NCBI GenBank assembly: GCA_002269645.1 | Contig: NIVC01001178.1 | Span: forward strand, 1-64,000 | Direction of reading: 5' to 3' | DNA length: 64,000 nucleotides | Source: Macrostomum lignano | Taxonomy: Eukaryota | Shown here: piece by piece, positions 35,981-57,818 of the stretch | How positions within the stretch are numbered: position 1 is the first letter of the stretch | Layout of the letters: every line of letters begins with the position of its first letter | Made by a program: the position numbers and the translations under genes | Notes under the pieces: model-generated | Seen by the model: only the letters and a program-made list of their open reading frames with translations | The model's database searches: none | What the model was told of the DNA's origin: nothing

Positions 35981-36964
35981 GGCTGCCGTTGGTAGAATTC
36001 TGCTAGAGAATGCTTCGTGGAAATTGGAAATTGCTTCTTCTTTCCAAGCTTTTGGTTATGGAATTTTTAGAGCGCGTTGGAATTTTCCTATTTATAGACG
36101 CGGTCATTTCCGGCGACCTTGGCGGCTGGGGGTGGGGAAACCCCCGATTAAAAGCCGGTTTTTGCCGAAACCGGTCCAGTGACATTCCAGACCGGCAACC
36201 GGTTTTGCCTTTCCAGGACGATCTGATAATTATTGCGAAATCGCGTGCACCAAGGTCGCAGATGCGTTGCTGTTTTTGTCACACCGCCCGGTTGGGTTGG
36301 GCAGGCGTTCTGGATTGGCCAGCTATTTCTATTGAGAAAAGGCTCAGGCGGAGAGGTCACGAGAGTCACGTGATTGCAAGAGGCAGCTAAAATCGAGGGG
36401 TGGAGCTCGGAAGAGGCGAAACTTGAAGTTGCAAATAAAGTTCTGTCGGATTGTTAATTCAGACAGTAGAAAATGTCACGTGACTTAATGTACGTTGAAA
36501 TAGGCTACGCCCTTATCAGCAGTTTCTTGTCTCTCGAACAGTAACTTAGTTTATTTGTCAACAAAGGTAGTTAAACCTGGTTAGAACCAGTTAAAGCCAC
36601 TTGTGTTCTCGCAATTACGAAACTTTTGCTAAATTGGAATTTTCCTTAAAACATAAAATATCATTTTCATTCAACTGGAAAATCTACCGAGGTTAGAAAA
36701 TTCCGCTTGAATTGTTTTCTTCTATAGGAAATTTCTGCAGCCTTCATCTGAGCCTGTCCTGCAGCCAAGAGCCAAGAGGTCAAGATGCTTAGTTGTTCGA
36801 AGATTAACAAATCTTTAGCTTGGGCGACTAAGGCTGGAAGATTAACATCTTCTTGGCCTGCATCTGTCAGGTGAGAATATTGAGAATTATGAATTTCGAT
36901 TTTATGCCTCTCTTTTAAAGTTTGTGTCATAAATTTGTAGTTAGGGTAGTGTGCAGCAGTGTGT

Positions 36965-37860
36965 TTCAGAGCCACTCATCACGGTGACCCCATGATGGTG
37001 ACCCGTCACGTTGACTTCCTCGCGGTGACTCAATCACAGTGGTTTTATCACGGGGACTCCCATCATGTTGACTCAATTACGGTGAGTCTATGATGTTGAC
37101 CCATTCACGGCGACTCCATCACGGTGACTCCATCATGGTGACTCCATCACGGTGACTCCATCACGGTGACTCCATCACGATGACTCCATCACGGTGACTC
37201 AATCATGGTGATTCCATCACGGGGACTTCCATCACGGTGACTCCATCACGGTGACTCCATCACCTTGACTCAATCACGGTGACTCAATCTCGGTGACTCA
37301 ATCTCGGTGTTTCAATCACAGTGACTCCAAGATGTTGACCCATCACGGTGACTTCATCACGGTGACTCCATCACGGTGACTCCATCACATTGACTCCATC
37401 ACGGTGACTCCATCACGGTGACTCCATCACGGTGACTCCATCACGGTGACTCCATCACGGTGACTCCATCACGGTGACTCCATCACGGTGACTTCATCAT
37501 GGTGACTCCATCACGGTGACTCTATCACGGTGACTTCATCACGGTGACTCCATCACGGTGATTCCATCACGGGGACTTCCGTCACGTTGACTCAATCATG
37601 GTGATTCCATCACGGGGACTTCCGTCACGTTGACTCAATCATGGTGATTCGATCACGGGGACTTCCATCACGTTGACTCATTCACGGTGACTCCATCACC
37701 TTGACTCAATCACGGTGACTCAATCTCGGTGTTTCAATCACAGTGACTCCAAGATGTTGACCCATCACGGTGACTTCATCACGGTGACTCCATCACAATG
37801 ACTCCATCATGGTGACTTCATCACGGTGACTTCCATCACGGCGACTCCATCATTTTGACC
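36965..37860. repeat. 14-bp minisatellite GGTGACTCCATCAC
   Basis: Tandem array in the BHMT1-DMGDH intergenic region. Confidence 0.92.
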
Positions 37861-38149
37861 CAATCACGGCACCTCAGCACTACTACATGAACCTGTAGTT
37901 TGAGATGAGAACCATACACAATTCATTGAAATTTCTTTGCCTATCAATTTTAAGAACAGAAATTGAAAATGATTACAGGTGAAATATTCTTTTCAAAAGG
38001 TGAATTAGGTAAACAGAGACGCCACCTCATTCTGTTTGGCGCCTTCCATTTCAGCCTGTTTGCAATGCATTGAGTCATTCGGTGCCCCTTGAGTCATTCG
38101 GTGCCCCTTGAGTCATTTGGCGCTTTTAGGGGTTGGCGTCCCCAATGAA

Positions 38150-38885
38150 TCCGCCATTTGGCGCCCCCCATCGAATATATTTGGCGCCCATATATATATT
38201 TGGCGCCCCCAATGAATCAATTTGGTGCCCCCATTGAATCTATTTGGCGCCCCTATTGGATCTATTTGGCCCCCCTATTGGATCTATTTGGCGCCCCTAT
38301 TGGATCTATTTGGCGCCCCTATTGGATCTATTTGGTGCCTCCATTGGATCAATTTGGCGCCCCCATTGGATCAATTTGGTGCCCCCATTGAATCTATTTG
38401 GCGCCCCCATTGGATCTATTTGGCCCCCCTATTGGATCTATTTGGCGCCCCTATTGGATCTATTTGGCGCCCCTATTGGATCTATTTGGTGCCTCCATTG
38501 GATCAATTTGGCGCCCCCATTGGATCAATTTGGCGCCCCCATTGGATCTATTTGGCGCCCCTATTGTATCCATTTGGCGCCCCTATTGGATCTATTTGGC
38601 GCCCCTATTGTATCTATTTGGCGCCCCTATCGGATCTATTTGGCGCCCCCATTGGATCTATTTGGCGCCCCTATTGGATCTATTTGACGCCCCCATTGGA
38701 TCTATTTGGCGCCCCTATTGGATCTATTTGGCGCCCCTATTGGATCTATTTGACGCCCCCATTGGATCTATTTGGCGCCCCTATTGGATCAATTTGGCGC
38801 CCCTATTGGATCAATTTGGCGCCCCTATTGGATCTATTTTGGCGCCCCCATTGGATCTATTTGGCGCCCCCATTGAATCTATTTT
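38150..38885. repeat. 22-bp minisatellite TTGGCGCCCCTATTGGATCTAT
   Basis: Tandem array; it produces the spurious repetitive ORFs at 38158-38916. Confidence 0.93.
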
Positions 38886-39352
38886 AAGCGCACAAATTTC
38901 GGTTATTGCATGCTGATTCAGGTCTGAACTTCACATAAACATAAACTTGGTCACAGTCACAATCTTGAATATGCTTGAAATTATAATAGCGATATTTTTC
39001 CAGGCACGTATGTTAGTGTTTACACCCAGCTGTGCAACAGACTGTGCGTGTGTGTGTTGACAGAGCCCCCGCATGAGCTGCGCTTGTTATGAACTTTTTG
39101 GGTGCAATCCATATTTTCCCTTGTTTCTATTTTTAAGTTCTAATAGAAAAATGGCATATACTGTTTTCTCAAGTATGGTTAGTCTCACTTTCCTAGAGTG
39201 ACTCACATTTAACCTTGGCGAGCAACTTCATTTAAACAAGATTTAATAACTTTGCCATTACGGCTATAATTTTTGTTTTGGTTCTATCAAGTTCTGTCCA
39301 GTTTGTTCAAGTTTACTTGAACCGAAATGACTGAATGAGTAAACACACGGAA

Positions 39353-39370
39353 AACCGGTTTAAACCGGTT
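39353..39370. promoter_or_regulatory. 18-bp palindrome AACCGGTTTAAACCGGTT (tandem Grainyhead / CP2-type site) upstream of DMGDH
   Basis: Perfect palindrome, identical to 55484-55501. Fits AACCGGTT x2 and CNRG-N6-CNRG. Function is inferred. Confidence 0.55.
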
Positions 39371-39699
39371 CTTCTGCTGTCTGCCGCAGCCAACTCTTGC
39401 CCCCGTCTAGTGGGCTGCTGACTTGTACAGGTTTGAGATTAGTCAGAGTGGCCTTGAAGTTCTGGGGGGTGTGGACGCGCAGGTCATGTGATCTGTCTTT
39501 TTTTGCTTTCTTCGAAATACTACTGTGTAATCTAGGTAAAAGTAGTATAGTGCTTGAAATCCAAATATTTTAAGCTATTTTTTATTTCTTCTCTTAGTTT
39601 CTCCTGTAGCTCAATTTGGCATACCTACTCAAGGCTGCAAGTGTTGAGTAAAAAAATTGTGTTGAGTAGTGTTAAGTAAAAATAATAAGTGTAAAATTT

Positions 39700-40225
39700 A
39701 TAGCCTGTGCTCAGTCTTAGTTATAGATTGTTTACAGTCTCAGTCATAGACTGTTTACAGTCTCAGTCATAGATTGTGTACAGTCTCAGTCATAGATTGT
39801 GTACATTCTCAGTCATAGATTGTGTACATTCTCAGTCATAGATTGTGTACATTCTCAGTCATAGATTGTGTACAACAGTCTCAGTCATAGATTGTGTACA
39901 TTCTCAGTCATAGATTGTGTACATTCTCAGTCATAAATTGTGTACAACAGTCTCAGTCATAGATTGTGTACATTCTCAGTCATAGATTGTGTACAACAGT
40001 CTCAGTCATAGATTGTGTACATTCTGAGTCATAGATTGTTTACAGTCTCAGTCATAGATTTTGTACATTCTGAGTCATAGATTGTTTACAGTCTCAGTCA
40101 TAGATTGTGTACATTCTGAGTCATAGATTGTTTACAGTCTCAGTCATAGATTGTGTACATTCTCAGTCATAGATTGTGTACAACAGTCTCAGTCATAGAT
40201 TGTGTACAACAGTGTCAGTCATAGA
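39700..40225. repeat. 23-bp minisatellite GTGTACATTCTCAGTCATAGATT
   Basis: Same family as 22755-23643; ends about 50 bp before the DMGDH ATG. Confidence 0.93.
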
Positions 40226-40273
40226 CAGCACTGGTCGTGGGACGATGTCACGGCAGGGTGTAAAGAATATTTA

Positions 40274-43200
40274 ATGGAAATGTTCATTCTCAGTAGTGTC
40301 AAAAGCATCAGTTGTTCTACATTATCCTACCCTCGCAGGGCTCTCTCGTCTTCCACAGAGCAGCAGCGCCAGCATCCTCTGTCCAAGCGATCGAGCAATG
40401 AAGCCGAAGTTGTAATCATTGGCGGTGGCATTGTGGGCGTCAGCACTGCTTACCATTTGGCTAAGGCCGGAGTTAAGGATGTTGTTCTGTTGGAGAAATC
40501 TGAACTTACCGCCGGTTCTACTTGGCACGCTGTGAGTAGCGTGTTTAGCGTATCGTCGATAAAATTGCTGACAAAATGTTAAATAAAATATTGAATTTTT
40601 GTTACTTTTATCTCTGTGAATTATTTTACTTCAAAAAAAGACAGTTATGTTGATTTTATCTCGCAGTTAAGTGTTCCATTCCTTTGTAACAGCTCAGTGC
40701 CATTCCTTTGTAACAGTTCATTGCCATTCCTGTGTAACAGTTCAGTGCCATTCCTGTGTAACAGTTCAGTGCCATTCCTTTGTAACAGTTCATTGCCATT
40801 CCTGTGTAACAGTTCATTGCCATTCCTGTGTAACAGTTCAGTGCCATTCCTGTGTAACAGTTCATTGCCATTCCTGTGTAACAGTTCATTGCCATTCCTG
40901 TGTAACAGTTCAGTGCCATTCCTGTGTAACAGTTCAGTGCCATTCCTGTGTAACAGTTCAGTGCCATTCCTTTGTAACAGTTCATTGCCATTCCTGTGTA
41001 ACAGTTCAGTGCCATTCCTGTGTAACAGTTCATTGCCATTCCTGTGTAACAGTTCAGTGCCATTCCTGTGTAACAGTTCATTGCCATTCCTGTGTAACAG
41101 TTCAGTGCCATTCCTGTGTAACAGTTCAGTGCCATTCCTGTGTAACAGTTCAGTGCCATTCCTGTGTAACAGTTCAGTGCCATTCCTGTGTAACAGTTCA
41201 TTGCCATTCCTGTGTAACAGTTCAGTGCCATTCCTGTGTAACAGTTCATTGCCATTCCTGTGTAACAGTTCAGTGCCATTCCTGTGTAACAGTTCATTGC
41301 CATTCCTGTGTAACAGTTCAGTGCCATTCCTGTGTAACAGTTCAGTGCCATTCCTGTGTAACAGTTCATTGCCATTCCTGTGTAACAGTTCAGTGCCATT
41401 CCTGTGTAACAGTTCAGTGCCATTCCTGTGTAACAGTTCAGTGCCATTCCTGTGTAACAGTTCAGTGCCATTCCTGTGTAACAGTTCAGTGACATTCCTG
41501 TCTGACAGTTCAGTGCCATTCCTGTCTAACACACAGAAAATGTTCTATAAAAACTGTTTCCCCACACGCAGGCCGGCCTCACCACATTCTTCCACCCGGG
41601 CATTAACGTGCGCCGCGTCCATTACTACAGCATGCAACTGTACTCTCAGCTCGAGGCGGAGACTGACCAACCAGTGGGTCTGCACACTCCAGGCTCCCTG
41701 CGCCTCATCACTACGCCGACTCGCATGGACGAGGCCCGATATCAGATGTCCAGGGCAGCCTGGTGCCAAGCCGAACAGCACCTAGTCGGACCGGAGAAAT
41801 GCTTGGAATTGTGTCCACTGCTCAACATGAGCACAGTGCTCGGTGGGATCTACAACCCTGGAGATGGTCACATCGATCCCTACTCGGTCACAATGGCGCT
41901 AGCCGCCGGGGCGCGTAAGTATGGCGCCGAGCTGTACCAGAACAGCCAGGTACGCGCCACAAGTCAGGACTCAAAAGGTATCTGGACAATAGTGACCGAT
42001 CACGGCGAACTCAAATCCAAGCATCTGGTCAACGCGGCTGGATTTCACGCTCGTGACGTTGGAAAACTGTCGGGATTGGACCTGCCAATCATTCCGGTGC
42101 ATCATCAGTACGTCATCACCAAAGCTGTGCCTGAGGTGGTCCAATTGAAGCGAGAGCTTCCTGTACTGCGCGACTTGGAAGCCTCCTACTATCTTCGCCA
42201 GGAGAAGCAGGGCCTCTTAGTGGGGCCGTACGAGTCTGCGGAGAACATGATGCTCTGCACTGACTGGTACGATAACGGGGTGCCGGACTCGTTCGGTAGG
42301 GAGCTGTTTGAGCCGGACCTTGGCCGAATCATGCCTCACCTGGAGCGCGCCATGGAGATGGTGCCGGCGATGCAGAACGCCGAGATTCAATCCGTCATAT
42401 CCGGGCCGATCACCTACAATGCGGAGAATGCCGGACTGATTGGCCCGGTGGAGGGGCCGCTGAATTATTGGTTGCTAGGCGGCCTTGGTTACGGCATAAT
42501 CCACGGTGGCGGCGTTGGCAAATACGTGGCGGACTGGATTCGTACTGGCGAACCGCCGTACGATTTGATTGAGCTGGACGCTAACAGGTATGGCAGAGTT
42601 TGGGGTCGGCAATTGCATGTTTAGACTGGGGAAACTGTGTGTTGAGATTGGGCAACCGTATCTTTGGAGTGTGGGTCAACCGTGTGTTTAAATTGGGCAA
42701 CCGTGTCTTTGGAGTGTGGGTCAACCGTGTGTTTAAATTGGGCAACCGTGTCTTTGAATTTTGGGTCAACCGTGTCTTTGAATTTTGGGTCAACCGTGTC
42801 TTTGGACTGGGGCAACCGTGTCTTTGGACTGGGGCAACCGTGTCTTTGGACTGGGGCAATCGTGTGTTTAGACTGGGGCAACCGTGTGTTTAGAATGGGG
42901 CAATCGTGTGTTTAGATTGGGCAACCGTGTCTTTGGAGTGTGGGTCAACCGTGTCTTTAGAGTGGGGCAACCGTATCTTTGGAGTGAGGCAACCTTGTCT
43001 TTGGATTTTGGGTCAACCGTGTCTTTGGACTGGGGCAATCGTGTGTTTAGACTGGGAAACCGTGTGTTTAGACTGGGAAACCGTGTGTTTAGACTGGGAA
43101 ACCGTGTGTTTAGACTGGGGCAATCGTGTGTTTAGACTGGGGCAATCGTGTGTTTAGACTGGGGCAATCGTGTGTTTAGACTGGGGCAATCGTGTGTTTA

Positions 43201-46200
43201 GACTGGGGCAACCGTTTCTTTGGACTGGGGCAACCGTTTCTTTGGACTGGGGCAACCGTGTCTTTGGACTGGGGCAACCGTGTCTTTGGACTGGGGCAAC
43301 CGTGTCTTTGGACTGGGGCAATCGTGTGTTTAGACTGGGGCAACCGTTTCTTTGGACTGGGGCAACCGTTTCTTTGGACTGGGGCAACCGTTTCTTTGGA
43401 CTGGGGCAACCGTTTCTTTGGAGTGGGACAATTTAAAAGTCAGGGCCGCTATACGTACACCTTGTGTGACCGCTTACCTTTATACGCATCCGTGTGCGTG
43501 CTCCGGGATGAGCGGATCGATCGTCGAGCTGCTTGACTTTTCGCTTTTGCCCCAAAGCGAGCCAACTACCCATCCGACAGGTACGGCTGGTGGGCCGACC
43601 GGAGCTACACGCACGCGAAGAGCCGCGAGACCTACGGGCTGAATAACGCTGTCGGCTATCCCAAGGAGGAGCGATTCGCCGGCAGGCCAACGAAACGCGC
43701 TGCTCAGACCAGCGCCCTGTACGACGAGTTGAAATCGGCCGGTGCCGAGTTTGGCTTTCACAACGGCTGGGAGCAGCCGCACTGGTTCGGCTTGACCGAG
43801 GAGGAGCGACGCTACGAGCCTTCTTTCCGACGAGGGAACTGGTTCCCAGCGATGCAGCGGGAATGCGAGGGAGTGCTGAACCGGGCTGGCGTTATGGATA
43901 TTACGCCATTTTCAAAGTTCGAGATTTCTGGTATGTGGCGTTAGGGTTTGAACTAGTGTCACTCTGAATCTGCTAATGTGTCACTCTGAATCTGCCAATG
44001 TGTCACTCTGAATCTGCCAATGCGTCACTCTGAATCAGCCAATGTGTCACTCTGAATCTGCCAATGTGTCACTCTGAATCTGCCAATGTGTTACTCTGAA
44101 TCAGCCAATGTGTCACTCTGAATCAGCCAATGTGTCACTCTGAATCAGCCAATGTGTCACTCTGAATCTGCCAATGTGTCACTCTGAATCAGCCAATGTG
44201 TCACTCTGAATCAGTTAATTTGTCACTCTGAATCAGCCAATGCGTCACTCTGAATCAGCCAATGTGTCACTCTGAATCAGCCGATGTGTCACTCTGAATC
44301 AGCCAATGTGTCACTCTGAATCTGCCAATGTGTCACTCTCAATCTACCAATGTGTCACTCTGAATCTGCCAATGTGTCACTCTGAATCAGCCAATGTGTC
44401 ACTCTGAATCAGCCAATGTGTCACTCTGAATCAGCCAATGTGTCACTCTGAATCTGCCAATGTGTCACTCTGAATCAGCCAATGTGTCACTCTGAATCAG
44501 CCAATGTGTCACTTCGAACCAGCCAATGTGTCACTCTGAATCTGCCAATGTGTCACTCTGAATCAGCCAATGTGTCACTCTGAATCAGCCAATGTGTCAC
44601 TTCGAACCAGCCAATGTGTCACTCTGAATCTGCCAATGTGTGACTCTGAATCAGCCAATGTGTCACTCTGAATCTGCCAATGTGTCACTTTGAATCAGCC
44701 AAAGTGTCACTCTGAATCAGCCAATGTGTCACTCTGAATCTCCGAATGTGTCACTCTGAATCTCCGAATGTGTCACTCTGAATCAGCCAATGTGTCACTC
44801 TGAATCAGCCAATGTGTGACTCTGAATCAGCCAATGCGTCACTCTGCATCTGTCAATGTGTCACTCTGAATCAGCCAATGTGTCACTCTAAATCTATAAT
44901 TGTCACTCTGAATGTCTGAATGTCACTCGTTAGATGCAGGAGGCCGTGTGCACCCTGGCGCACCTTAAACGACATTGTCACACAACCGGCCAGAGACATT
45001 GCTGCCCGTTTCGCCGACTCCCCTAAGCAGACACACAAGCGCGCGGATACGTACGCAGTCATACGCACAGGCACACACTCACACAGGAGTTTACAGCGGC
45101 TCTTTTATCGTTAGGCATGTACACTTCACCGTGCCTTGGGGGTTGGCCCTCAAAGGCGTTAATTGCACGAGCAGAGCCAAGCCGAGATTCCAATTCAGCC
45201 CCAAATTAATTTGACTGCACTTGGAATCGAGCCTGGGCCGCTGGCACATCAGAGCGCCACGCTGGACCACTGGGCTCCGGCCTCAGTTCTGAATCTGACA
45301 GTTGTCCAATGGCCAGTCATTAGAATCCATAACCATAATCCAAGAAATATTGTTTTTCACTGGGTTTTCTCATTGCATTCAAAATATCAAGGTTTCCAAG
45401 CAGAATGCATCCAACAAGACCAACCCTCAAAAATTCTCAACAAGGCCCTCGAGCCGGAGAATTCCTGGACCTGGTGACTGCAAACCGACTGCCCAAAGTG
45501 AACCGCACCTGCATCACGCACATGCTCACGCCAAGGGGCCGAGTGTTCTCTGAGATGACTCTGACTTGCTTGCCAGCCGATGATGGCCAACAGAAGTTCC
45601 GGGCCCTGACCGGTTCCGGCTCTGAGATGCACGACCTCATCTGGCTGAAGGACTGGCGACACAAACTCCGCTTCCAGGACGGCGTCAAGATCGACAACGT
45701 CACGGATTCGATCGGCTGCCTGTCTGTAGCCGGTCCGCTGTCCCGTGAAATTCTTCAGTCGTTGACCTCGGAGAGCCTCGATGCGGGGTCTTATCCGTTT
45801 CTGCAGGCTAAGCAGCTGCAAATTGATGGAGTTGACTGCTTGGCCATCAGAATATCCTACACAGGAGAGCTGGGCTGGGAGCTCTACTGTGGGATCGGAG
45901 AGCTGGCCAGGCTGTACAAATCCATCTGGCGGTGTGGACAGCCGCTCGGTCTGGTGAACTTCGGCTCGTACGCGATGAACTCGCTCCGGCTGGAGAAAGG
46001 GTTCGCCATGTGGGGAGCCGAGATGAACTGCGACACTGGCCCATTGGAGGCTGGCCTCGGCGGCTTCATCAGGCTGGGAAAGTCTGCAGATTTTGTTGGG
46101 AAAGCTGCCGTGGCGGAGGCGAAGCTGAAACTGCAACAGGATGGAGCCCGTCAGTTGAGGATGCTGCGAGTTGACAGTGTTGACGTGGATCCTGAAGGCA

Positions 46201-47767
46201 ACGAATCAGTCTGGTTGGACGGCAAGGTGAGCAAACCGTACCTGGTTTTACTTATTTCATAGATTATCGAACAGTTTATAGTAAAATATGAAAACGAGTT
46301 AACCTACGTAAAAATAAAATCATCGTTCCTCTAAGTTTGGAAGTTATACTACTTTCTATAAGTAGGTTGTAAATGTAAACATGTAAATAGCTATTTGATT
46401 GGGAAATGAAACACGGTATGTAAAATATATAATTACAACTATTATATATTGAATAACCCTGCCCATTCCACTGTCAGTCATGTACACTGTGTAACCCCTT
46501 AACAAACAAAAAGTATGATAATTACAGACAGATTAAAAAGTAGGGTTTCCTTGGATTCTCAGAATCGTGCGTTCGTTTGATGTGGCAATGACGCAGTGGC
46601 ATTGTTATTAACGGAGTACAGTGGTCTATTGTTTCATACATGTAGCTAACTAATTTCCGGGCATTAATCAAATCATTTAACTGATTGGTTGGAACAGAGC
46701 AACTGAACAAACTGCTATTGTACCAGTATTCCATTCTTCATGCGGTACAATGCAGAATTCCCTAAGCTAATCTATTCTTCCTACTTTAGTAAAGATTATT
46801 AAAAGCTGCTCCAATTCATCTGACTTCCTCATAGAGGCATTAATCTTGTATTTGCATCATATATACCGGTAGATTTGTACTTTAGTGTACGGTAATATAG
46901 AGATATATATATAATCGGTAAACCTTAGCAAGGGCCTTGATACATGAATGATGTGTAACTTTTACATGTACGTTTAAATCGTGAAACTTTTTGTGCAAAA
47001 CTTTGAGTTTAAATCTTACCAAATCTCTATTCTTCTGCCTAAATCAACCTAAATCTAGATTCATCTACCTGAATCTAGACCCATCAAACTAAATCTAGAC
47101 CCATCAACTTAAATCTAGATTCATCTATCTAAAGCTGGACTCATCAACCTAAATCTAGACCTATCTACCTGAATTTAGATTCATCTAACTAAATCTGGAT
47201 TCATCTACCTAAATCTAGATTCATCTAACTAAATCTAGATTCATCTACCTAAATCTAGATTCATCCAACTAAAGCTAGATTCATCTACCTAAATCTAGAC
47301 CTATCTACCTGAATTTAGATTCATCTAACTAAATCTAGACCCATCAAACTAAATCTAGACCCATCAAACTAAATCTAGACCCATCAAACTAAATCTAGAC
47401 CCATCAAACTAAATCTAGACCCATCAACCTAAATCTAGACCCATCAAACTAAATCTAGACCAATCAACCTAAATCTAGACCCATCAAACTAAATCTAGAT
47501 ATATCTACCTAAACCTTCGCAATAAACCACCACTCAAACCCCTAAAAGGTGGTCGGCAACACGACATCCGGTAGCTACAGTTTCAGCCGCGGTCACGGAC
47601 TCGCCTTTGCATACGTGCCCGCCAGCCTGGGCGCCGGCACCCAGCTGGAGGTGGATCTTCTCGGTCGTCGCGTCCCGGCAGTGGTGCTGTCGAAACCACC
47701 GTTGCTGCCGGAGCAGGCGAGAAAGAAGAAACCCGAAGCGGCATCCGTTGGTTCGAGTCAGCAATGA
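40274..47767 (+). CDS. DMGDH: Dimethylglycine dehydrogenase, mitochondrial; exons 40274-40531, 41572-42587, 43581-43930, 45445-46226, 47549-47767 (874 aa)
   Basis: FAD motif [10 protein letters not shown], covalent-flavin motif [10 protein letters not shown]|[22 protein letters not shown], and a GcvT folate domain ([19 protein letters not shown]). Exon total 2625 nt is in frame. The last two acceptors are AAG. The N-terminus is Ser/Arg-rich like a presequence; exact start uncertain. Confidence 0.95.
40665..41530. repeat. 24-bp minisatellite CAGTTCAGTGCCATTCCTGTGTAA
   Basis: Fills DMGDH intron 1. Confidence 0.95.
42620..43425. repeat. About 22-bp minisatellite GACTGGGGCAACCGTGTCTTTG
   Basis: Fills DMGDH intron 2. 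Confidence 0.93.
43955..44915. repeat. 22-bp minisatellite GTGTCACTCTGAATCAGCCAAT
   Basis: 5' part of DMGDH intron 3. Confidence 0.95.
44940..45282 (-). mobile_element. SINE family A, copy 3 (DMGDH intron 3)
   Basis: Reverse-complement similarity to 39-396 along its length. Confidence 0.82.
47040..47515. repeat. 20-bp minisatellite AAATCTAGACCCATCAAACT and variants
   Basis: 3' end of DMGDH intron 4, ending close to the acceptor. Confidence 0.9.
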
Positions 47768-49080
47768 TCTGGATCACGATAGTCATTGTGGTTCATGATG
47801 ACGATTAGAAAATTGATTGTGTACAGATAGAGATAGATTCGTGATTAGATTGGGATATAAACATGATTAGATTGGAATACAATCGTGATTATATTGGGAT
47901 AATCGTTATTAGATTTCGATATAATCGTGATTAGATTGAGATAGAATCGCGATTAGTTTTAGATAGAACCGTCATTAGTTCGCTGTTATTAGGATTCATT
48001 GTAGATATTGACAGGGATATGTTATAATGTCACTTCGTTAAGTACGACCTTTTGATTGATTTATTTCTTTTACCAAATGTTTGTTTCCTAATTATAATGT
48101 AAATCTTCCATCGGACTCAGTCCGGAAATTCTCGTCGCAAAATATGTTCGTTCAATAGTTTATCTATAAGATCTATAGATAAAAATAGATTCGTGGGTTA
48201 ATGTATTTATTAGGGTAAAATTCTGTCATTAAATGCCCTTGACAGAAACTGGTGCAGATTTGATTTATTTTTTGTTTAATTTATTATACTTTTAAAATTG
48301 TTTATAGAATTTGGATTTTGCTTAATCTTGTTCTCATTTTTCAGATCTCTCAGTAATTTCGGTTGCTGCCACGTAGTGCGAGGAATCATTGATTTAGTAA
48401 ATTTTTATGCTGTCTTTATTAATTAATAAATATTATGTTATAAGCAATCTTTTGTAAAATGATCCTGATTAGTAATGCGCATTCTAATAAATTAAATTTA
48501 CATACCAATAGCTACAGTTCTCGTCGTAAATACCTTTATTTTTTTAAATACATCCTTATTTATTGCCGGTGTGTGTTCGTAAAACTGTGCTTTTTCCGGC
48601 TTGAGAATAATTTAACACATTTTCTAATGTTAGTTAAAGGTTTGAAAAAATTAAATTTAAAATAAGGGCAAAGTTTTCAATGTGGACGAAACAAACAGGG
48701 TTTTTTTAAATTTCACTTATTTATTTTGCTGTGGGGTGGCAGCCGTACAGTCTGAAATTTTACTTAGCTTTATACTGGACGTCTATAGAACTAGTAAGGC
48801 TCGCAGTTTAATGTTGACTGGAGTAAATTGAAAGCAATAATGAATAAGTTCTTTATAGCTAATGTCTAAGAAATGATGAAAAAATTAAAACTGTCAGAAA
48901 CGTTTTAGCTTACTGCGTTTTAATTTGCAAAATTATTCTTGTAGAGTAGAATGACCTTTCTCGACACTTTTCTATCATCGATTTACTAAGACTTCGTGTT
49001 TGAATTTCGCAGCAGCCATAATTATCAATGAGGAAGATGACAATGAAACAAATAAAAAGCAAATGGTTGATTTATTTTTT

Positions 49081-52000
49081 CTATTTCTTCCTCATCTGCT
49101 GGCCCAGCTGCTTCACTCGATTGTCTTCCTCTTCGGTGGTCTCGTGCGCGTGCTGCACCAGCATCTCGCTGCCGCGGGTGACGCCCCAGTTGTCCGGCCT
49201 GCTCATGGCGGCCGAGTATGGCCGACCGCTGGCCGGGTTCAGGTTCTCCCAGTAGTCCCGGCCAGACCGGGCTCGAATCCACGGTTTAGTGCTCATTTTC
49301 ATTCCGCCGCCCCAGGCGATGTGCTTCTCGGAGCCGGCTGGGAATCGGCCTCTTTCGGCGGCGAGCTCCTCGGCGATGGCGCGGATGTGATAGGCCTCGA
49401 AGCCGCAGCAGCCGCCAATGTAGCGGACGCCAAGGTCGTAGGCAGCCCTGCCAGATTTAAAATATACCGATTTTACTACTTATTATACTACTGCTGATTC
49501 TAATATAGACTTGCGAAATCGCTTCTGTTGCACTGCATGCTGGTTTAAAACAATTGACAATTTTAATCCAACAATTTGAAGCTTCAAAAAGTATGAATTA
49601 GACTAATGGTGAATTGATTAGACTAATAGTGAATTGATTAGACTAATGGTGAATTGATTAGACTAATGGTGAATTAATTAGATTAATGGTGAATTGATTA
49701 GACTAATGGTGAATTTATTAGACTATTGGGGCATGGTTTAGACTAATAACGCATGAATTAGACTAATAAGGCGTGGATTAGACTAATAACGCATAAATTA
49801 GACTAATAAGGCATGGATTAGACTAATAAGGCATGGATTAGACTAATAAAGCATGGATTAGACTAATAAAGCATGGATTAGACTAATAAAGCATGTATTA
49901 GACTAATAAAGCATGGATTAGACTAATAAGGCATGGATTAGACTAATAAGGCATGGATTAGACTAATAAAGCATGGGTTAGACTAGTAAGGCATGGATTA
50001 GACTAATAAAGCATGGATTAGACTAATAAAGCATGGGTTAGACTAATAAAGCATGGATTAGACTAATAAAGCATGTATTAGACTAATAAAGCATGGATTA
50101 GACTAATAAGGCATGAATTAGACTAATAAGGCATGGATTAGACTAATAAAGCATGGGTTAGACTAATAAAGCATGGATTAGACTAATAAGGCATGGATTA
50201 GACTAATAAAGCATGGATTAGACTAATAAAGCATGGATTAGACTAATAAGGCATGGATTAGACTAATAAAGCATGGGTTAGACTAATAAAGCATGGATTA
50301 GACTAATAAGGCATGGATTAGACTAATAAGGCATGGATTAGACTAATAAGGCATGGATTAGACTAATAAAGCATGGATTAGACTAGTAAAGCATGTATTA
50401 GACTAATAAGGCATGAATTAGACTAATAAGGCATGGATTAGACTAATAAGGCATGGATTAGACTAATAAGGCATGGATTAGACTAATAAGGCATGGATTA
50501 GACTAACAAGGCATGGATTAGACTAATAAGGCATGGATTAGACTAATAAAGCATGGATTAGACTAATAAAGCATGTATTAGACTAATAAAGCATGGATTA
50601 GACTAATAAGGCATGGATTAGACTAATAAGGCATGAATTAGACTAATAAGGCATGGATTAGACTAATAAGGCATGGATTAGACCAAAGGACAATAAATGT
50701 AGATTCAACCTGTCTCACCTAGCGAAGCGGTGCATGTCCCAGCGGGTGCACAATCGACTCTCCATGGCCAAAGGAAACTCGGGCAGGTCGATGCAGCCCT
50801 GCTTCTCAGCATCCGGAGTCATATAGGCACGGGCTGGCACATCAGGTAGGCCTTGAGATTCTCGCGCTCCAAACCAGCCTTCATCAGCTTGATCGCTTCC
50901 AGGGTGACAAACGGATCGAAGTGGCAGTTGACGCCCACGAGTTTCGCACCAGCGCGAGCCATACGGACGGCGCAGTCGCCCGCGGAGTTGCCGTGCATGT
51001 CGCCTTGCGGTCCGATGCACATCGTGCAGGCCACGGGCAGCCCGGTCTCCAGCCCGACCTGCGGCGGGGGGGCGTTGTTGGTTGGCTAGATTAGCAATCC
51101 ATTATCACGTACTTTAATTTCCTGATTTGGCTAGATTAGCAATCCATCATCGTGTACTTTAATTTCCTGATTTGGCTAGATTAGCAATCCATCATCGTGT
51201 ACTTTAATTTCCTGATTTGGCTAGATTAGCAATCCATCATCGTGTACTTTAATTTCCTGATTTGCCTAGATTAGCAATCCATCGTGTACTTTTATTCCTT
51301 ATTTGGCTAAATTAGCTATATATCGTGTACTTTTATTTTCTGATTTGGCTAGATTAGCAATCCATCATCGTGTACTTTAATTTCCTGATTTGGCTAGATT
51401 AGCAATCCATCATCGTGTACTTTTATTCTCTGATTTGGCTAGATTAGCAATCCATCGTGTACTTTTATTTCTTATTTGGCTAAATTAGCTATATATCGTG
51501 TACTTTTATTTCTTATTTGGCTAAATTAGCTATATATCGTGTACTTTTATTTTCTGATTTGGCTAGATTAGCAATCCAATACAGCCTGCAATTTTATTAA
51601 TAATTTGGATCAGTTTGTGGATAATTTGAAAATGCTAGTCCATGGTCGAAACCAATGCCAAAAATGAGGTCTGTTCGAACTGTTTCGACCATAGACTAAC
51701 ATATTCTTTGCAATTTTTTTAACACCGAGTCGAGTATCTTACCTCAATGGCCCACTCTGCCTCCTCAACATGCTCAAAGTACTCGCACAGCACCAAGTCG
51801 GCTCCTTCGGCCTTGAAAGTCTGCATCTGGCCACGGAAGATGGCCTGGATTGAAGCTTTGTCACCGCCGCTCAGGTAGGTCGGAGTCTGGCACACTCCGC
51901 CTAGAAACAGGGCGTCACCTTCTTGAGCGACCTCACGAGCAATGCGACACGCGGCGGTGTTGATGGCGGTGCACTGAAATTCAAGGGGGGTTGACTATAT

Positions 52001-52941
52001 ATTAGCAATCCATTCTATGGGTTTGATAGATTAGCAATCCATTCTATGGGTTTGATAGATTAGCAATCCATTCTATAGGTTTGGCTATAGATTAGCAATC
52101 CATTCTATAGGTTTGCTAGATTAGCAATCCATTCTATAGGTTTGATAGATTAGCAATCCATTTTATAGGTTTGATAGATTAGCAATCCATTCTATAGGTT
52201 TGATAGATTAGCAATCCATTCTATAGGTTTGCTAGATTAGCAATCCATTCTATGGGTTTGATAGATTAGCAATCCATTCTATGGGTTTGATAGATTAGCA
52301 ATCCATTCTATGGGTTTGATAGATTAGCAATCCATTCTATAGGTTTGATAGATTAGCAATCCATTCTATAGGTTTGATAGATTAGCAATCCATTTGGGTC
52401 ACTTGGGTCACTTAATATAAGAAGGATCATACAGAATTTTCAGCGTTGTGAAATTTCGATCTTATGAATCCCCTCCCATCCATTTTATTAATATGAACGC
52501 CAGTTTGAGCTAAATTACTAACGATCTGAAAAAAGTTTTACAAACAGTTTAGTAGAAAGAGTCGAATCAAAAAGTGTGAGGCGAAATCAAAGAGCTGTTT
52601 TTGTATCTCTCCAGATGAAGCGTTAAAGCAGATTGCTCAAGCGTTCTCATGTGCTCAAACTCTAAGTCTCACCCCATACTTTTCCTGAGCCGTGTTGCCT
52701 CTATTGGAAAGCTTGTCCTCGCTGGCATAGTAAGTGAACGCCTGCATCACATCAGAGCCGGCTCTGAGAAACTCTCGATGCAGCTGCTTCACAGCTTCCG
52801 GGTATTCGACCACCGCTTCCGGTGTCCACGGCCCCGCCTTGACGTAGCCGCGCTTCTCCAGGGCGAACACGAAGCCGCCGTCTCCAATGACAACCTCGCC
52901 GTTGTCAAGCCGCTCCAGAATGCCGCGTCTTTTGTTTGACA

Positions 52942-52942
<1 letters not shown>
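49081..52942 (-). CDS. BHMT: BHMT copy 2; exons 52673-52942, 51743-51973, 50719-51058, 49081-49447; apparent 1-bp deletion near 50830 (pseudogene or sequencing error)
   Basis: Same BHMT motifs as copy 1. Exon total 1208 nt is one short of a multiple of 3. CAGCCCGTGCCTATATG here versus CAGCCGTTGGCCTACATG in copy 1. Confidence 0.85.
49595..50685. repeat. 20-bp minisatellite GCATGGATTAGACTAATAA(G/A)
   Basis: Fills BHMT2 intron 3. Confidence 0.95.
51080..51580. repeat. About 45-bp minisatellite TTTGGCTAGATTAGCAATCCATCATCGTGTACTTTAATTTCCTGA
   Basis: Fills most of BHMT2 intron 2. Confidence 0.9.
52000..52395. repeat. 29-bp minisatellite GTTTGATAGATTAGCAATCCATTCTATAG
   Basis: BHMT2 intron 1. Shares the core AGATTAGCAATCCAT with the intron 2 repeat. 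Confidence 0.92.
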
Positions 52943-52985
<43 letters not shown>

Positions 52986-52986
52986 G

Positions 52987-53049
<63 letters not shown>

Positions 53050-53050
53050 G

Positions 53051-53149
<99 letters not shown>

Positions 53150-53170
53150 GTGTCTGTCTGTGTGTCTGTG

Positions 53171-53259
<89 letters not shown>

Positions 53260-53272
53260 GCCTGTCTGTCTG
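52943..53272. repeat. (TGTC)n / (GACA)n microsatellite abutting the BHMT2 start codon
   Basis: On the minus strand it reads ...GACAGACA-ATG. Confidence 0.95.
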
Positions 53273-53976
53273 CTGATTTTCCGCACTATCAGTCGCAGCT
53301 GTTGCATATATATACCCACAGCTACTCCGTCCAAATGAAAACCAGTTCCAGCTGGTTTTACAATCAAACTTATCGATTCGAAACTTTTTCTTAAGTTGAC
53401 CCAAGAAGTCTGAGCATTGGAAAAGATTCGAGATTTCTGAGAGCAGCTTATCGTGAAACCTAGTAAACATGGCTTCCTACCCTCGTCAAACCCGCAATTC
53501 AGGTTCCACATTTCTCTAGTCCAAGGAGTTCCGAAATTTTGCATCGGAATCAAAATTAATTTTTTTCATTGAAAATAAAACAACTCTTTGTTTTAATAAG
53601 CTGTATTCAAACTCACTGTCTCTTTACATCGCGAGATTTTAAATTAATCAATCGAATTTTCAAATCTATTTCTGTAGATTAACATTCCAGATCTGTTAGT
53701 TAACGCAGTCCTTGTTCAGCTTTAGTCTAGATTGTAAAACAATTTTGTGACTTGGTCATTATCTGTGAGTAAGCTGCTAGGGGGTAAACTAGGGGGGGGG
53801 GTACGTATTAAACACCTGAGAAATTCTCACGCAGTTCCTCAGCTCACGCTTTCGATACGTTGCGCCACGAAACTCGCTTTGGCTCAGTTTGGGGCGTTCA
53901 CAGACAATTTCTGTGTTTGTGTTATATGAATTGAGGGCAGATTTAATGATACAGTAGTTGATAAAACTGCTTTCTG

Positions 53977-54975
53977 GGTGCTGAGGTCACTGGGTGCTGA
54001 GGACACTGGGTGCTGAAGTCACTGGGTGCTGAGGACACTGGGTGCTGAGGACACTGGGTGCTGAGGACACTGGGTGCTGAGGACACTGGGTGCTGAGGAC
54101 ACTGGGTGCTGAGGACACTGGGTGCTGAGGACACTGGGTGCTGAGGACACTGGGTGCTGAGGACACTGGGTGCTGAGGACACTGGGTGCTGAGGACACTG
54201 GGTGCTGAAGTCACTGGGTGCTGAGGACACTGGGTGCTGAGGACACTGGGTGCTGAGGACACTGGGTGCTGAGGACACTGAGTGCTGAGGACACTGGGTG
54301 CTGAGGACACTGGGTGCTGAGGACACTGGGTGCTGAAGTCACTGGGTGCTGAGGACACTGGGTGCTGAGGACACTGGGTGCTGAAGTCACTGGGTGCTGA
54401 GGACACTGGGTGCTGAAGTCACTGGGTGCTGAGGACACTGGGTGCTGAGGACACTGGGTGCTGAGGACACTGGGTGCTGAGGACACTGGGTGCTGAGGAC
54501 ACTGGGTGCTGAGGACACTGGGTGCTGAGGACACTGGGTGCTGAGGACACTGGATGCTGAGGACACTGGGTGCTGAGGACACTGGTTGCTGAGGACACTG
54601 GGTGCTGAGGACACTGGGTGCTGAGGACACTGGTTGCTGAGGTCACTGGGTGCTGAGGACACTGGGTGCTGAGGACACTGGGTGCTGAGGTCACTGGGTG
54701 CTGAGGACACTGGGTGCTGAGGACACTGGGTGCTGAGGACACTGGGTGCTGAGGACACTGGGTGCTGAGGACACTGGGTGCTGAGGACACTGGGTGCTGA
54801 GGTCACTGGCTGCTGAGGTCACTGGGTGCTGAGGTCACTGGCTGCTGAGGTCACTGGGTGCTGAGGTCACTGGGTGCTGAGGACACTGGGTGCTGAGGTC
54901 ACTGGGTGCTGAGGTCACTGGGTGCTGAGGACACTGGCTGCTGAGGACACTGGGTGCTGAGGTCACTGGTTGCTA
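53977..54975. repeat. 16-bp minisatellite GGGTGCTGAGGACACT
   Basis: Tandem array downstream of the extra BHMT exon 1. Confidence 0.95.
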
Positions 54976-55072
54976 AGGAGCTCCATTTTGAGGATATTCT
55001 GCAGCTGAAGATTTAAGGGGAAAGACAGAAAACCAAAATAATATCAAAAGCCACTATCAGCCACAAACTCAC

Positions 55073-55342
55073 CCCGAATTTCTGCGATGCAGTGTTGCCC
55101 CGGTTGGAAAGCTTGTCCTCGCTGGCATAGTAAGTGAACGCCTGCATCACATCAGAGCCGGCTCTGAGAAACTCGCGATGAAGCTGCTTCACAGCTTCTG
55201 GGTACTCGACCACCGCTTCCGGTGTCCACGGCCCCGCCTTGACGTAGCCGCGCTTCTCCAGGGCGAACACGAAGCCGCCGTCTCCAATGACAACGTCGCC
55301 ATTGTCGAGCCGCTCCATAATGCCTCCTCGTTTGTTCGACAT
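55073..55342 (-). CDS. BHMT: Third copy of BHMT coding exon 1 only (alternative first exon or truncated paralogue)
   Basis: [32 protein letters not shown]...SQKFG followed by an intact phase-0 donor GTGAGT. No further BHMT exons before 52942. Confidence 0.85.
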
Positions 55343-55483
55343 GGTAAATGATGAGGCTGGTGCTGGGACTCTCTGGTGGATTCTGAACTTTTCGAGTGGC
55401 GCGGATTGTTTGAAATCGGGCTATTTATATCCACTTACAGCCGAGTTTTGCGCCTGTCTCTCTCTCTCACCCCTCGGTCTCGG

Positions 55484-55501
55484 AACCGGTTTAAACCGGT
55501 T
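55484..55501. promoter_or_regulatory. 18-bp palindrome AACCGGTTTAAACCGGTT about 140 bp upstream of the extra BHMT exon 1
   Basis: Identical to 39353-39370. Confidence 0.55.
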
Positions 55502-55869
55502 CTGTTTAACTATTTTATTGACCGATAAAGTCAAACGCTCCTGACCTAGATAGGGCCACGTACCACCGACTCAGTTGGCCATGGAGATCTGCAAGAATTG
55601 ACAATATATGAGACTGCAACACAGCATCGATTGGTTAAATAAAGCTTGATTTTCAGCAAACCAATTGCTAGACTCAGACCTCCATGATGACTCTCTCTGG
55701 AGACTTTGACATGCCGCTAGACTTGCTGCAATATCTATGTTGTCAATGGAAAATACCTGGCGAGGTAACTCGCCGCTAAAAATGTAACTCAGGAAATGGA
55801 AAATTCTAAAAATTGCAACCGTAAACATAAAGGTCAAATCTTAGATTCCGTTCTTTAATAAGAAATAAT

Positions 55870-56912: not shown

Positions 56913-57818
<906 letters not shown>

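What the first reader, a model, noticed from the sequence alone, without database searches (positions are those of the whole stretch)
39353..55501. Identical 18-bp CP2/Grainyhead-type palindrome upstream of DMGDH and BHMT: candidate shared regulatory element
Seen: AACCGGTTTAAACCGGTT occurs exactly at 39353 (about 900 bp 5' of the DMGDH ATG) and at 55484 (about 140 bp 5' of the extra BHMT exon 1), with unrelated flanks. Half-sites sit upstream of the other two starts: AACCGGTT at 36197 within a CCGG-rich cluster (36150-36205), AACCAGTT at 36585 (BHMT1 side) and AACCAGTT at 53340 (BHMT2). Known: Grainyhead binds AACCGGTT and TFCP2/LSF binds CNRG-N6-CNRG, which this palindrome fits exactly. Inference: the pathway genes are co-regulated by a CP2/GRH factor.
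Basis: partly seen in the sequence, partly recalled or inferred. Interest (0 to 1): 0.7.

Follow-up and report, generated by a model that had tools for sequence, protein, structure and literature searches.

The report
Shared palindrome in flatworm BHMT–DMGDH cluster
Two identical 18-base palindromes that look like ideal binding sites for a Grainyhead/CP2-type gene regulator sit in the flatworm Macrostomum lignano's cluster of betaine-breakdown genes; they probably are real control sites, but nothing yet shows that they are specific to this pathway.

Summary
AACCGGTTTAAACCGGTT occurs exactly at 39353 and 55484 and nowhere else, even with 3 mismatches (0.02 expected). The shared stretch is 20 bp, its flanks are unrelated, and it shows no transposon features. 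It is the longest true orphan exact repeat in the window.

The window is Macrostomum lignano contig NIVC01001178.1:1-64000. The gene anatomy needs correcting:
- The annotated 881-aa DMGDH starts at 36785, only 805 bp head-to-head from BHMT1. Copy 1 therefore lies in DMGDH intron 1, not 5' of the gene.
- The "extra" BHMT exon 1 is the first exon of BHMT2 in one annotated copy of the locus. Copy 2 lies 54 bp upstream of a TATAAATAG box.
- The only other TATAAATAG in the window is BHMT1's. It has GRH-like octamers 56-100 bp upstream.
- A degenerate copy of the BHMT2 module lies 50 bp upstream of a TATA-like box before DMGDH.
- The AACCAGTT "half-sites" are at chance level on their own.

The motif fits the published GRH (AACCGGTT) and CP2 (CNRG-N6-CNRG) consensus sites. 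Factor binding, regulatory effect and pathway specificity are all untested, and no genome-wide count was possible. All three assembly copies keep the sites, but they are too similar for that to mean much. Five other phyla share the BHMT-DMGDH head-to-head pair without the motif. Verdict: a plausible, ordinary candidate transcription-factor site, a new member of a known kind.

The parts
39353..39370 (.). 18-mer copy 1 (AACCGGTTTAAACCGGTT; identity with copy 2 runs to 39372). It sits in an 827-bp unique island (38885-39711) between two minisatellites, inside DMGDH intron 1. No TATA box lies about 50 bp away on either side.
55484..55501 (.). 18-mer copy 2. With its flanking bases it is a perfect 20-bp palindrome, GAACCGGTTTAAACCGGTTC (55483-55502). 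It lies 142 bp upstream of the ATG of the distal BHMT2 exon 1 and 54 bp upstream of that exon's TATA box.
55421..55429 (-). TATAAATAG box of the distal BHMT2 first exon, 79-87 bp upstream of the ATG at 55342. A GA-repeat (about 55453-55469) lies between it and the 18-mer.
55013..55342 (-). Distal BHMT exon 1 ([18 protein letters not shown]…), shown here as the ORF; the exon proper ends at the GT donor after …SQKFG. It is the first exon of the annotated 402-aa BHMT2 (P0003) in copy NIVC01000293.1.
36153..36204 (.). Cluster of GRH-type octamers in the BHMT1/DMGDH bidirectional promoter: AGCCGGTT (36153), AACCGGTC (36169), ACCGGC (about 36190) and perfect AACCGGTT (36197). They lie 56-100 bp upstream of BHMT1's TATA box.
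36088..36096 (-). TATAAATAG box of BHMT1, 108-116 bp upstream of the ATG at 35980. It is the only other TATAAATAG in the window.
36550..36602 (+). Degenerate copy of the BHMT2 upstream module, in DMGDH orientation. Bases 36550-36598 align to the minus strand around 55530-55486 (36 of 42 aligned bases identical, one 6-bp gap). It includes a degenerate 18-mer, AACCAGTTAAAGCCACTT (36585-36602, 5 mismatches), 50 bp upstream of ATAAAATA (36653-36660).
36785..36870 (+). DMGDH exon 1 (ATG at 36785, GT donor after 36870). It splices in frame to 40339 and gives the 881-aa product, the same length and CDS start as annotated in the two other assembly copies.
36871..40338 (+). DMGDH intron 1. It is mostly three minisatellites (36977-37852, 14-bp unit; 38156-38884, 22-bp unit; 39712-40225, 23-bp unit) and contains 18-mer copy 1.
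40339..47767 (+). DMGDH exons 2-6: 40339-40531, 41572-42587, 43581-43930, 45445-46226, 47549-47767. All introns are GT-AG.
34595..35980 (-). BHMT1 coding region (ATG at 35980), head-to-head with DMGDH at 805 bp between start codons.
49081..52942 (-). BHMT2 body plus the proximal duplicate of exon 1 (ATG at 52942). A (TGTC)n microsatellite lies directly upstream (52943-53272), and this copy has no TATA box and no motif. Other gene models use this proximal exon (P0246; the 603-aa model on the window's own contig).
30538..30545 (.). Lone AACCGGTT about 746 bp upstream of the ATG (29792, minus strand) of a cNMP-binding-domain gene. It is kept in copy NIVC01000254.1 and lost in NIVC01000293.1.

Best explanation
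The 18-mer is most likely a composite high-affinity binding site for a Grainyhead/CP2-family transcription factor. It consists of two perfect AACCGGTT palindromes one helical turn apart (CCGG-N6-CCGG), so it could hold two GRH-type dimers or one CP2-type tetramer.

It appears to belong to a promoter layout reused across the betaine/dimethylglycine gene cluster of Macrostomum lignano: a GRH/CP2-like element about 50-100 bp upstream of a TATA box.
- BHMT2, distal first exon: the perfect 18-mer lies 54 bp upstream of TATAAATAG.
- BHMT1: three octamer-like sites lie 56-100 bp upstream of an identical TATAAATAG.
- DMGDH: a degenerate copy lies 50 bp upstream of ATAAAATA.
- A second perfect 18-mer sits in DMGDH intron 1, where it would act as an intronic enhancer or at an unmapped alternative start.

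Shown: the sequences, positions, enrichment, lack of repeat context, and gene models. Inferred: that a GRH/CP2 protein binds, that binding changes transcription, and that the three genes respond together.
For: - Only two matches in 64 kb even with up to 3 mismatches, against 0.02 expected.
- Unrelated flanks and no TIR or longer repeat. It is the longest true orphan exact repeat in the window.
- Exact AACCGGTT occurs at 4 loci against 0.82 expected.
- TATAAATAG occurs only twice in the window, both at BHMT promoters and both with the motif 54-100 bp upstream. By my arithmetic the chance of that joint placement is about 5e-5.
- The BHMT2 module's best non-self match in the whole window, apart from copy 1, lies in the 805-bp BHMT1/DMGDH intergenic region, in DMGDH orientation and at the same distance from a TATA-like box. 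It scores 32, no shuffle of 1000 reaches that, and the next unrelated hit scores 25.
- The motif matches the published consensus sites: GRHL dimer AACCGGTT and CP2 tetramer CNRG-N5/6-CNRG (PMC5829564).
- All motif sites inside the cluster are identical in the three assembly copies of the locus, while the lone octamer outside the cluster is lost in one copy.
Against: - There is no binding, accessibility or expression evidence.
- The three copies are 96-100% identical around the sites, so their retention says little.
- No transcription start is mapped, and the three annotated BHMT2 models disagree on the first exon.
- Copy 1 has no TATA box nearby and lies 2.6 kb inside DMGDH.
- LSF-type CP2 factors are reported to prefer CTGG/CCAG half-sites and not to bind a GRH site (PMC3348937), so the subfamily is unclear.
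- I did not check whether M. lignano has GRH or CP2 genes.
- The flank-only part of the DMGDH-side similarity is barely above background (26 against 25).
- In six other species the region upstream of BHMT shows no enrichment of the motif (5 found, 3.2 expected).
Confidence: 0.5

Rival explanations
1. This is a generic promoter or enhancer element, not a pathway-specific one. AACCGGTT-type sites, including the tandem form, may be common near many M. lignano genes because CP2-type factors are broadly expressed. Their presence at BHMT and DMGDH would then say nothing about a dedicated betaine-pathway regulon. The genes' coordinated expression, if any, would come from the ancient shared bidirectional promoter.
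For: - A lone exact octamer lies about 746 bp upstream of an unrelated cNMP-binding-domain gene.
- CP2-subfamily factors are described as ubiquitously expressed.
- BHMT and DMGDH are head-to-head in Lingula, Capitella, Owenia, Priapulus and Lytechinus without the motif. The pairing therefore predates the element and does not need it.
- No published link between BHMT/DMGDH and GRH/CP2 was found.
Against: - Within the window the tandem 18-mer occurs only inside the cluster.
- No octamer match (one mismatch or fewer) lies just upstream of the other ORF starts I checked by eye (3195, 58614, about 59400) against the list. This was not a systematic check.
- The lone outside octamer is not kept in all copies.
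Confidence: 0.27
2. The two copies have a neutral mutational or mobile origin. They could be small-scale products such as a tandem duplication of a 10-bp unit (AACCGGTTTA|AACCGGTTCT), an excision footprint with duplicated 8-bp target sites, or a short ectopic conversion tract between the paralogous BHMT regions. In this reading they have no regulatory role.
For: - The 18-mer can be read as 8 bp + TA + the same 8 bp, or as a 10-bp direct repeat.
- It contains TTAA and TA, the target sequences of piggyBac and Tc1/mariner elements (read directly from the sequence).
- The locus carries duplicated BHMT exon 1 copies and many minisatellites, so local rearrangement is active.
Against: - Two independent events would have to give the same 20-mer.
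- There is no flanking homology, no TIR and no element body at or near either site.
- A conversion tract of only 20 bp would be unusually short.
- The precise placement 54 bp upstream of a TATA box, mirrored at BHMT1 and DMGDH, is not expected from a footprint.
Confidence: 0.1
3. The palindrome is the binding site of a different, unidentified factor, or a structural element such as a cruciform-prone 20-bp palindrome. Its resemblance to GRH/CP2 sites would then be coincidental.
For: - Copy 2 is a perfect 20-bp palindrome.
- The shared module with the DMGDH promoter extends about 30 bp beyond the 18-mer (TTTATCGGTCAATAAAATAGTTAAAC), which suggests additional or other factors.
- Flatworm transcription-factor specificities are largely uncharacterised.
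Against: - The match to the GRH octamer is perfect, twice over, and the spacing equals the CP2 rule.
- From my own knowledge, no other widely conserved family has this consensus. Myb, ETS, E-box and AP-2 sites do not fit.
Confidence: 0.1
4. Pure coincidence of two identical 18-mers.
Against: - Expected 0.02 matches even with up to 3 mismatches.
- It passes a look-elsewhere control over all exact repeats in the window.
Confidence: 0.03

Closest known systems
Grainyhead/GRHL response element (AACCGGTT, bound by a dimer)
   Same: Each half of the 18-mer is a perfect AACCGGTT palindrome. The C and G positions reported as most critical are present. The sites lie in a promoter-proximal position or a first intron, as with many GRH targets (PMC5829564, PMC3348937).
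   Different: Here two octamers sit at a fixed 10-bp centre-to-centre spacing and share the central TTTAAA, which is not the canonical single-site form. The neighbouring genes are metabolic enzymes of methyl-group catabolism rather than epithelial-barrier genes. No binding has been shown.
CP2/LSF/TFCP2 tetramer site (CNRG-N5/6-CNRG)
   Same: CCGG-N6-CCGG fits the rule exactly, with half-sites one helical turn apart on the same face. CP2 factors act at TATA-proximal promoter elements.
   Different: The published LSF half-sites are CTGG/CCAG, and LSF was reported not to bind a GRH site from Ubx (PMC3348937). The perfect palindromy of each half is a GRH-type feature. The subfamily is therefore undetermined.
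[quoted passage not shown]
   Same: The same metabolically linked genes are clustered, including a BHMT duplication next to DMGDH (PMC6557678). The head-to-head BHMT-DMGDH pairing is also present in five invertebrate phyla examined here.
   Different: The flatworm BHMT duplication is probably independent of the mammalian one; this is inference. No GRH/CP2 control of the human cluster turned up in the literature search.
Transposon excision footprint or MITE terminus
   Same: A short palindrome that can be read as a duplicated 8-bp target with a 2-bp filler and a central TA/TTAA.
   Different: There is no element body, no TIRs beyond the palindrome itself, no flanking homology and no other copies in the window.

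Membership tests
Grainyhead (GRH/GRHL) binding site | Sequence match to the consensus AACCGGTT | tested here: met
   There are two perfect octamers per 18-mer at both loci, plus one at 36197. The consensus is taken from PMC5829564.
Grainyhead (GRH/GRHL) binding site | Bound by a GRH-family dimer in vitro or in vivo | not testable with these tools
   This needs EMSA, DAP-seq, ChIP or CUT&RUN with the M. lignano protein.
Grainyhead (GRH/GRHL) binding site | A GRH orthologue exists and is expressed in the organism | not tested
The family is reported from fungi to animals, so presence is likely, but that is inference.
CP2/LSF/TFCP2 tetramer site | Two CNRG half-sites separated by 5-6 bases | tested here: met
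   CCGG-TTTAAA-CCGG is present at 39355 and 55486. The stricter CCRG-N6-CCRG pattern gives 12 strand-matches against 4.36 expected, and 4 of those 12 are these two palindromic sites.
CP2/LSF/TFCP2 tetramer site | Half-sites of the CTGG/CCAG type preferred by LSF | tested here: inconclusive
   The perfect copies have CCGG, not CTGG or CCAG. The degenerate DMGDH-side copy has CTGG…CCAG (36575-36592). The literature says LSF does not bind a GRH site.
Shared cis-regulatory element of co-regulated genes | Present in the promoters of all genes said to be co-regulated, at comparable positions | tested here: met
   GRH-type elements lie 54, 56-100 and 50 bp upstream of TATA or TATA-like boxes of BHMT2, BHMT1 and DMGDH. 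The DMGDH copy is degenerate, and the transcription starts are predicted, not mapped.
Shared cis-regulatory element of co-regulated genes | Rare elsewhere in the genome, or enriched at the pathway's genes | not testable with these tools
   No M. lignano genome collection is searchable here. The attempt to sample the genome through transposon proteins returned no M. lignano contigs.
Shared cis-regulatory element of co-regulated genes | Conserved in orthologous promoters of related species despite diverged flanks | tested here: inconclusive
   The only material available was three near-identical M. lignano copies (96-100% identical) and distant phyla. In six distant species there was no enrichment (5 against 3.2). 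No other Macrostomum genome was reachable.
Transposable element, MITE or footprint | Similarity extends beyond the core into a repeat family, or TIR/TSD structure is present | tested here: not met
   Flanks are unrelated, no other copies exist in the window, and the only inverted repeat is the palindrome itself.
Conserved bidirectional gene pair (BHMT-DMGDH) | Head-to-head orientation with a short shared intergenic region, conserved across phyla | tested here: met
   The start codons are 805 bp apart in the window. The gap is 572 bp in Lingula, 3.8 kb in Capitella, 1.7 kb in Owenia, 0.9 kb in Priapulus and 4.4 kb in Lytechinus. DMGDH is not adjacent to BHMT in Actinia.

The most novel reading that the evidence does not exclude
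In Macrostomum, a Grainyhead/CP2-family factor may have been recruited as a dedicated switch for betaine and methyl-group catabolism. It would act through tandem perfect sites placed on an ancient bilaterian BHMT-DMGDH bidirectional pair and on the duplicated BHMT2.

Betaine is an osmolyte, M. lignano lives in the intertidal zone, and GRH/CP2 factors control epithelial barrier and osmoregulatory programmes in other animals (that last point is from my own knowledge, not checked here). The element could therefore couple salinity or barrier state to osmolyte breakdown. That would be a metabolic regulon for a factor family best known for epithelial genes.
Probability: 0.12. Interest if true: 0.6.

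Novelty: new member of a known kind. Interest (0 to 1): 0.3.

Why it matters
If the 18-mer is a working GRH/CP2 site, it would be a compact, sequence-defined control element for M. lignano, a transgenic flatworm model in which few promoter elements have been described. It would give a testable case of one factor coordinating three linked enzymes of choline, betaine and methionine metabolism.

The corrected anatomy also matters for anyone cloning these promoters. BHMT1 and DMGDH share an 805-bp bidirectional promoter, and BHMT2 has duplicated first exons. The head-to-head BHMT-DMGDH pair seen in five further phyla gives a simpler and older basis for co-expression, which any claim about the motif has to be weighed against.

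As it stands this is a reasonable hypothesis, not a discovery.

Tried and rejected
1. Genome-wide background. I tried to sample M. lignano DNA through the Gypsy-type integrase ORF at 17959-18726. The exact look-up found nothing, and the last protein search returned no M. lignano contigs. No frequency estimate outside this locus was therefore possible.

2. DMGDH protein search to reach SARDH or DMGDH paralogues in M. lignano. It returned no M. lignano hits.

3. Look-up of my spliced 881-aa DMGDH to find transcript contigs and a 5' end.

4. Paralogue footprinting.
- The upstream regions of the three BHMT exon-1 copies show no blastn similarity beyond the ATG.
- A MAFFT alignment suggested a conserved block between motif and TATA box, but its Smith-Waterman score was not above shuffles (1784 of 2000 shuffles scored as high). 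I rejected that block.

5. Conservation among the three assembly copies. All sites are kept, but the flanks are 96-100% identical, so this is uninformative.

6. Cross-phylum test. The regions upstream of BHMT in Lingula, Capitella, Owenia, Priapulus, Lytechinus and Actinia have 5 octamers with one mismatch or fewer, against 3.2 expected. One exact AACCGGTT lies 186 bp upstream of the Actinia BHMT. This is not significant.

7. A 17/18 match inside the Capitella DMGDH gene looked striking. It is the coding sequence for the conserved peptide NWFKPV, so I rejected it as regulatory evidence.

8. TE or MITE reading. No supporting structure was found.

9. Literature. There is no hit for the 18-mer itself. 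No M. lignano promoter-motif study mentions it. No link between BHMT/DMGDH and GRH/CP2 was found. The flatworm grainyhead search was unproductive.

10. Rfam and tRNA scans of the window found only a tRNA-like SINE piece, unrelated to the finding.

Full report
**Source and observation**

The window is eukaryotic. It is bases 1-64000 of contig NIVC01001178.1 of the Macrostomum lignano Mlig_3_7 assembly. A 202-aa gene at window 58006-58614 is found at exactly those coordinates in that record. The BHMT ORF is 98% identical to an M. lignano protein.

The 18-mer AACCGGTTTAAACCGGTT is present exactly at 39353 and 55484. These are the only matches even with up to 3 mismatches, against 0.02 expected. 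The identity runs for 20 bp. The flanks are unrelated, and the only inverted-repeat structure is the palindrome itself.

As a look-elsewhere control I listed every low-copy exact repeat of 16 bp or more in the window. All longer ones belong to dispersed SINE-like repeats, so this 20-mer is the longest true orphan.

Exact AACCGGTT occurs at four loci against 0.82 expected. The AACCAGTT "half-sites" are at chance level (3 against 2.62), and so are one-mismatch octamers as a class (25 against 18.6). The exception is a tight cluster of three within 52 bp at 36153-36204.

The assembly holds two further copies of the locus: NIVC01000293.1 (L001, L002, L011) and NIVC01000254.1 (L003). In both, the annotated DMGDH product is 881 aa, and its CDS begins about 800 bp from the BHMT1 start codon.

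I rebuilt that model in the window. The exons are 36785-36870, 40339-40531, 41572-42587, 43581-43930, 45445-46226 and 47549-47767. Every intron is GT-AG, the reading frame is open, and the product is exactly 881 aa.

It follows that:
- BHMT1 (ATG 35980, minus strand) and DMGDH (ATG 36785, plus strand) are head-to-head, 805 bp apart.
- 18-mer copy 1 lies in DMGDH intron 1. It sits in an 827-bp unique island between two of the three minisatellites that fill that intron.

The "extra BHMT exon 1" (ATG 55342) is the first exon of the annotated 402-aa BHMT2 in copy NIVC01000293.1. A second, proximal exon-1 copy (ATG 52942) is used by other gene models (P0246). It is also used by a 603-aa model on the window's own contig that reads through a (TGTC)n microsatellite. 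A third model splices the distal exon to BHMT1. Which first exon is really used cannot be settled without RNA data.

**Promoter architecture**

TATAAATAG occurs only twice in the window, both times on the minus strand:
- at 36088-36096, 108-116 bp before the BHMT1 ATG;
- at 55421-55429, 79-87 bp before the distal BHMT2 ATG.

18-mer copy 2 ends 54 bp upstream of the BHMT2 box. In the BHMT1 promoter, AGCCGGTT, AACCGGTC and the perfect AACCGGTT lie 56, 72 and 100 bp upstream of its box. With four octamer loci in 64 kb, I estimate the chance of both boxes having one within about 110 bp upstream at roughly 5e-5.

Outside the motif and the TATA box, the two BHMT promoters show no significant similarity.

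The 51-bp stretch consisting of copy 2 and its distal flank (minus strand 55534-55484) has its best non-self match in the window, apart from copy 1, at 36550-36598. That match is on the plus strand, which is the DMGDH orientation. It has 36 of 42 aligned bases identical with one 6-bp gap and scores 32; no shuffle of 1000 reaches that, and the next unrelated hit scores 25.

That segment ends in a degenerate 18-mer (AACCAGTTAAAGCCACTT, 5 mismatches), 50 bp upstream of ATAAAATA at 36653, which is 125 bp before the DMGDH ATG. The flank-only part of this similarity is barely above background (26 against 25), so I rate this third copy as suggestive only.

Copy 1, in the intron, has no TATA box about 50 bp away on either side.

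**What the motif resembles**

Published work gives AACCGGTT as the GRHL consensus, bound by dimers, and CNRG-N5/6-CNRG as the CP2 site, bound by tetramers (PMC5829564). LSF is reported to bind CTGG-N6-CTGG and not a GRH site, while GRH binds LSF sites weakly (PMC3348937).

The 18-mer is two perfect GRH palindromes with centres 10 bp apart, and it reads CCGG-N6-CCGG. It therefore meets the sequence criterion of both subfamilies. The palindromic halves lean toward GRH. The spacing, and the CTGG…CCAG form of the degenerate copy, lean toward CP2.

Whether M. lignano has and expresses such factors was not tested. I found no paper linking BHMT or DMGDH to GRH/CP2, none mentioning the 18-mer, and no M. 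lignano promoter-motif study that covers it.

**Conservation**

All cluster-associated sites are identical in the three assembly copies. The lone octamer at 30538, about 746 bp upstream of a cNMP-binding-domain gene, is lost in one copy. Local identity around the sites is 96-100%, so this carries little weight.

BHMT and DMGDH are also head-to-head in Lingula, Capitella, Owenia, Priapulus and Lytechinus. DMGDH is not next to BHMT in Actinia. Humans have a BHMT/BHMT2/DMGDH cluster (PMC6557678). The regions upstream of BHMT in those six species show no enrichment of the motif (5 against 3.2 expected). The gene pairing is therefore ancient, and the motif, as far as I can see, is specific to the Macrostomum lineage.

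**Verdict**

- Most likely (about 0.5), the 18-mer is a functional GRH/CP2-type site within a repeated "element, about 50 bp, TATA box" promoter layout, with a second copy acting from DMGDH intron 1.
- The main rival (about 0.27) is that such sites are common in M. lignano promoters and say nothing specific about this pathway. The older shared bidirectional promoter would then be enough to explain co-expression.
- A neutral footprint or duplication origin (about 0.1), a different factor or structural role (about 0.1), and coincidence (about 0.03) are less likely.

The finding is a sensible, testable hypothesis of an ordinary kind: a candidate transcription-factor site. I classify it as a new member of a known kind, with interest about 0.3.

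Noticed in passing
window 34595-55342; L004, L005, L006, L008, L009: BHMT and DMGDH are head-to-head neighbours in M. lignano and also in a brachiopod, two annelids, a priapulid and a sea urchin (gaps 0.6-4.4 kb). DMGDH is not next to BHMT in the sea anemone Actinia. Together with the human BHMT/BHMT2/DMGDH cluster, this looks like an ancient bilaterian divergent gene pair.
   Followed up: partly
L005 4350-4367 (Capitella); L006 3494-3511 (Owenia); L004 1537-1554 (Lingula): The conserved DMGDH peptide NWF(K/D)PV is encoded by a sequence that mimics the 18-mer. Capitella has AACTGGTTTAAACCGGTT on the coding strand, a 17/18 match. M. lignano's own DMGDH has NWFPAM at this position. I take this to be a coding coincidence, but it is an odd one given the gene involved.
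   Followed up: partly
window 52655-52942, 55013-55342 and 35618-35980: There are three copies of BHMT exon 1, 93-94% identical in nucleotides with no similarity upstream of the ATG. The three assembly copies of the locus carry three different BHMT2 gene models: 402 aa from the distal exon; 603 aa reading through a (TGTC)n microsatellite as a 'TDRQ' repeat; and a 427-aa chimera splicing the distal exon to BHMT1 across DMGDH. This indicates alternative first exons, annotation artefacts, or both.
   Followed up: partly
window 1-64000 compared with L001/L002 and L003: The window is one of three copies of this locus in Mlig_3_7. It looks mosaic relative to the other two: 100% identical to NIVC01000293.1 around 39353, but 100% identical to NIVC01000254.1 around 36197. 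That fits recombination or conversion among homeologues or haplotypes, or assembly mixing.
   Followed up: no
window 36977-37852, 38156-38884, 39712-40225, 40664-41531, 42600-43440, 53974-54979, 56913-57818 and many others: The window has a very high load of minisatellites and microsatellites with 4- to 24-bp units, often hundreds of bp long. They fill introns and intergenic DNA and produce long spurious ORFs. Arrays related to the 23-bp-unit array in DMGDH intron 1 also lie at about 22753-23642.
   Followed up: no
window 42-396, 6472-6830, 44975-45200; also 3868-3937, 4039-4129, 8849-8935, 26468-26507: There appear to be at least two dispersed short repeat families. One region carries a tRNA-like segment (Rfam tRNA, 33.7 bits, at 3868-3937) that ARAGORN does not call as a tRNA gene. 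These are probably tRNA-derived SINEs.
   Followed up: no
window 17434-18726 and 20483-20875: These are remnants of a Gypsy-type LTR retrotransposon (RNase H and integrase ORFs, broken). The closest database relatives are only about 40-45% identical, apart from two short, partial 88-96% matches, one of them an M. lignano UniRef entry.
   Followed up: partly
window about 55453-55469 (written for the minus strand): A GAGAGAGAGAGA tract lies between 18-mer copy 2 and the BHMT2 TATA box. It is a possible GAGA-factor-type promoter element.
   Followed up: no
L007 9815-9822 (Actinia tenebrosa): An exact AACCGGTT lies 186 bp upstream of the sea-anemone BHMT start codon. It is a single hit and is not significant across the six species examined.
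   Followed up: partly
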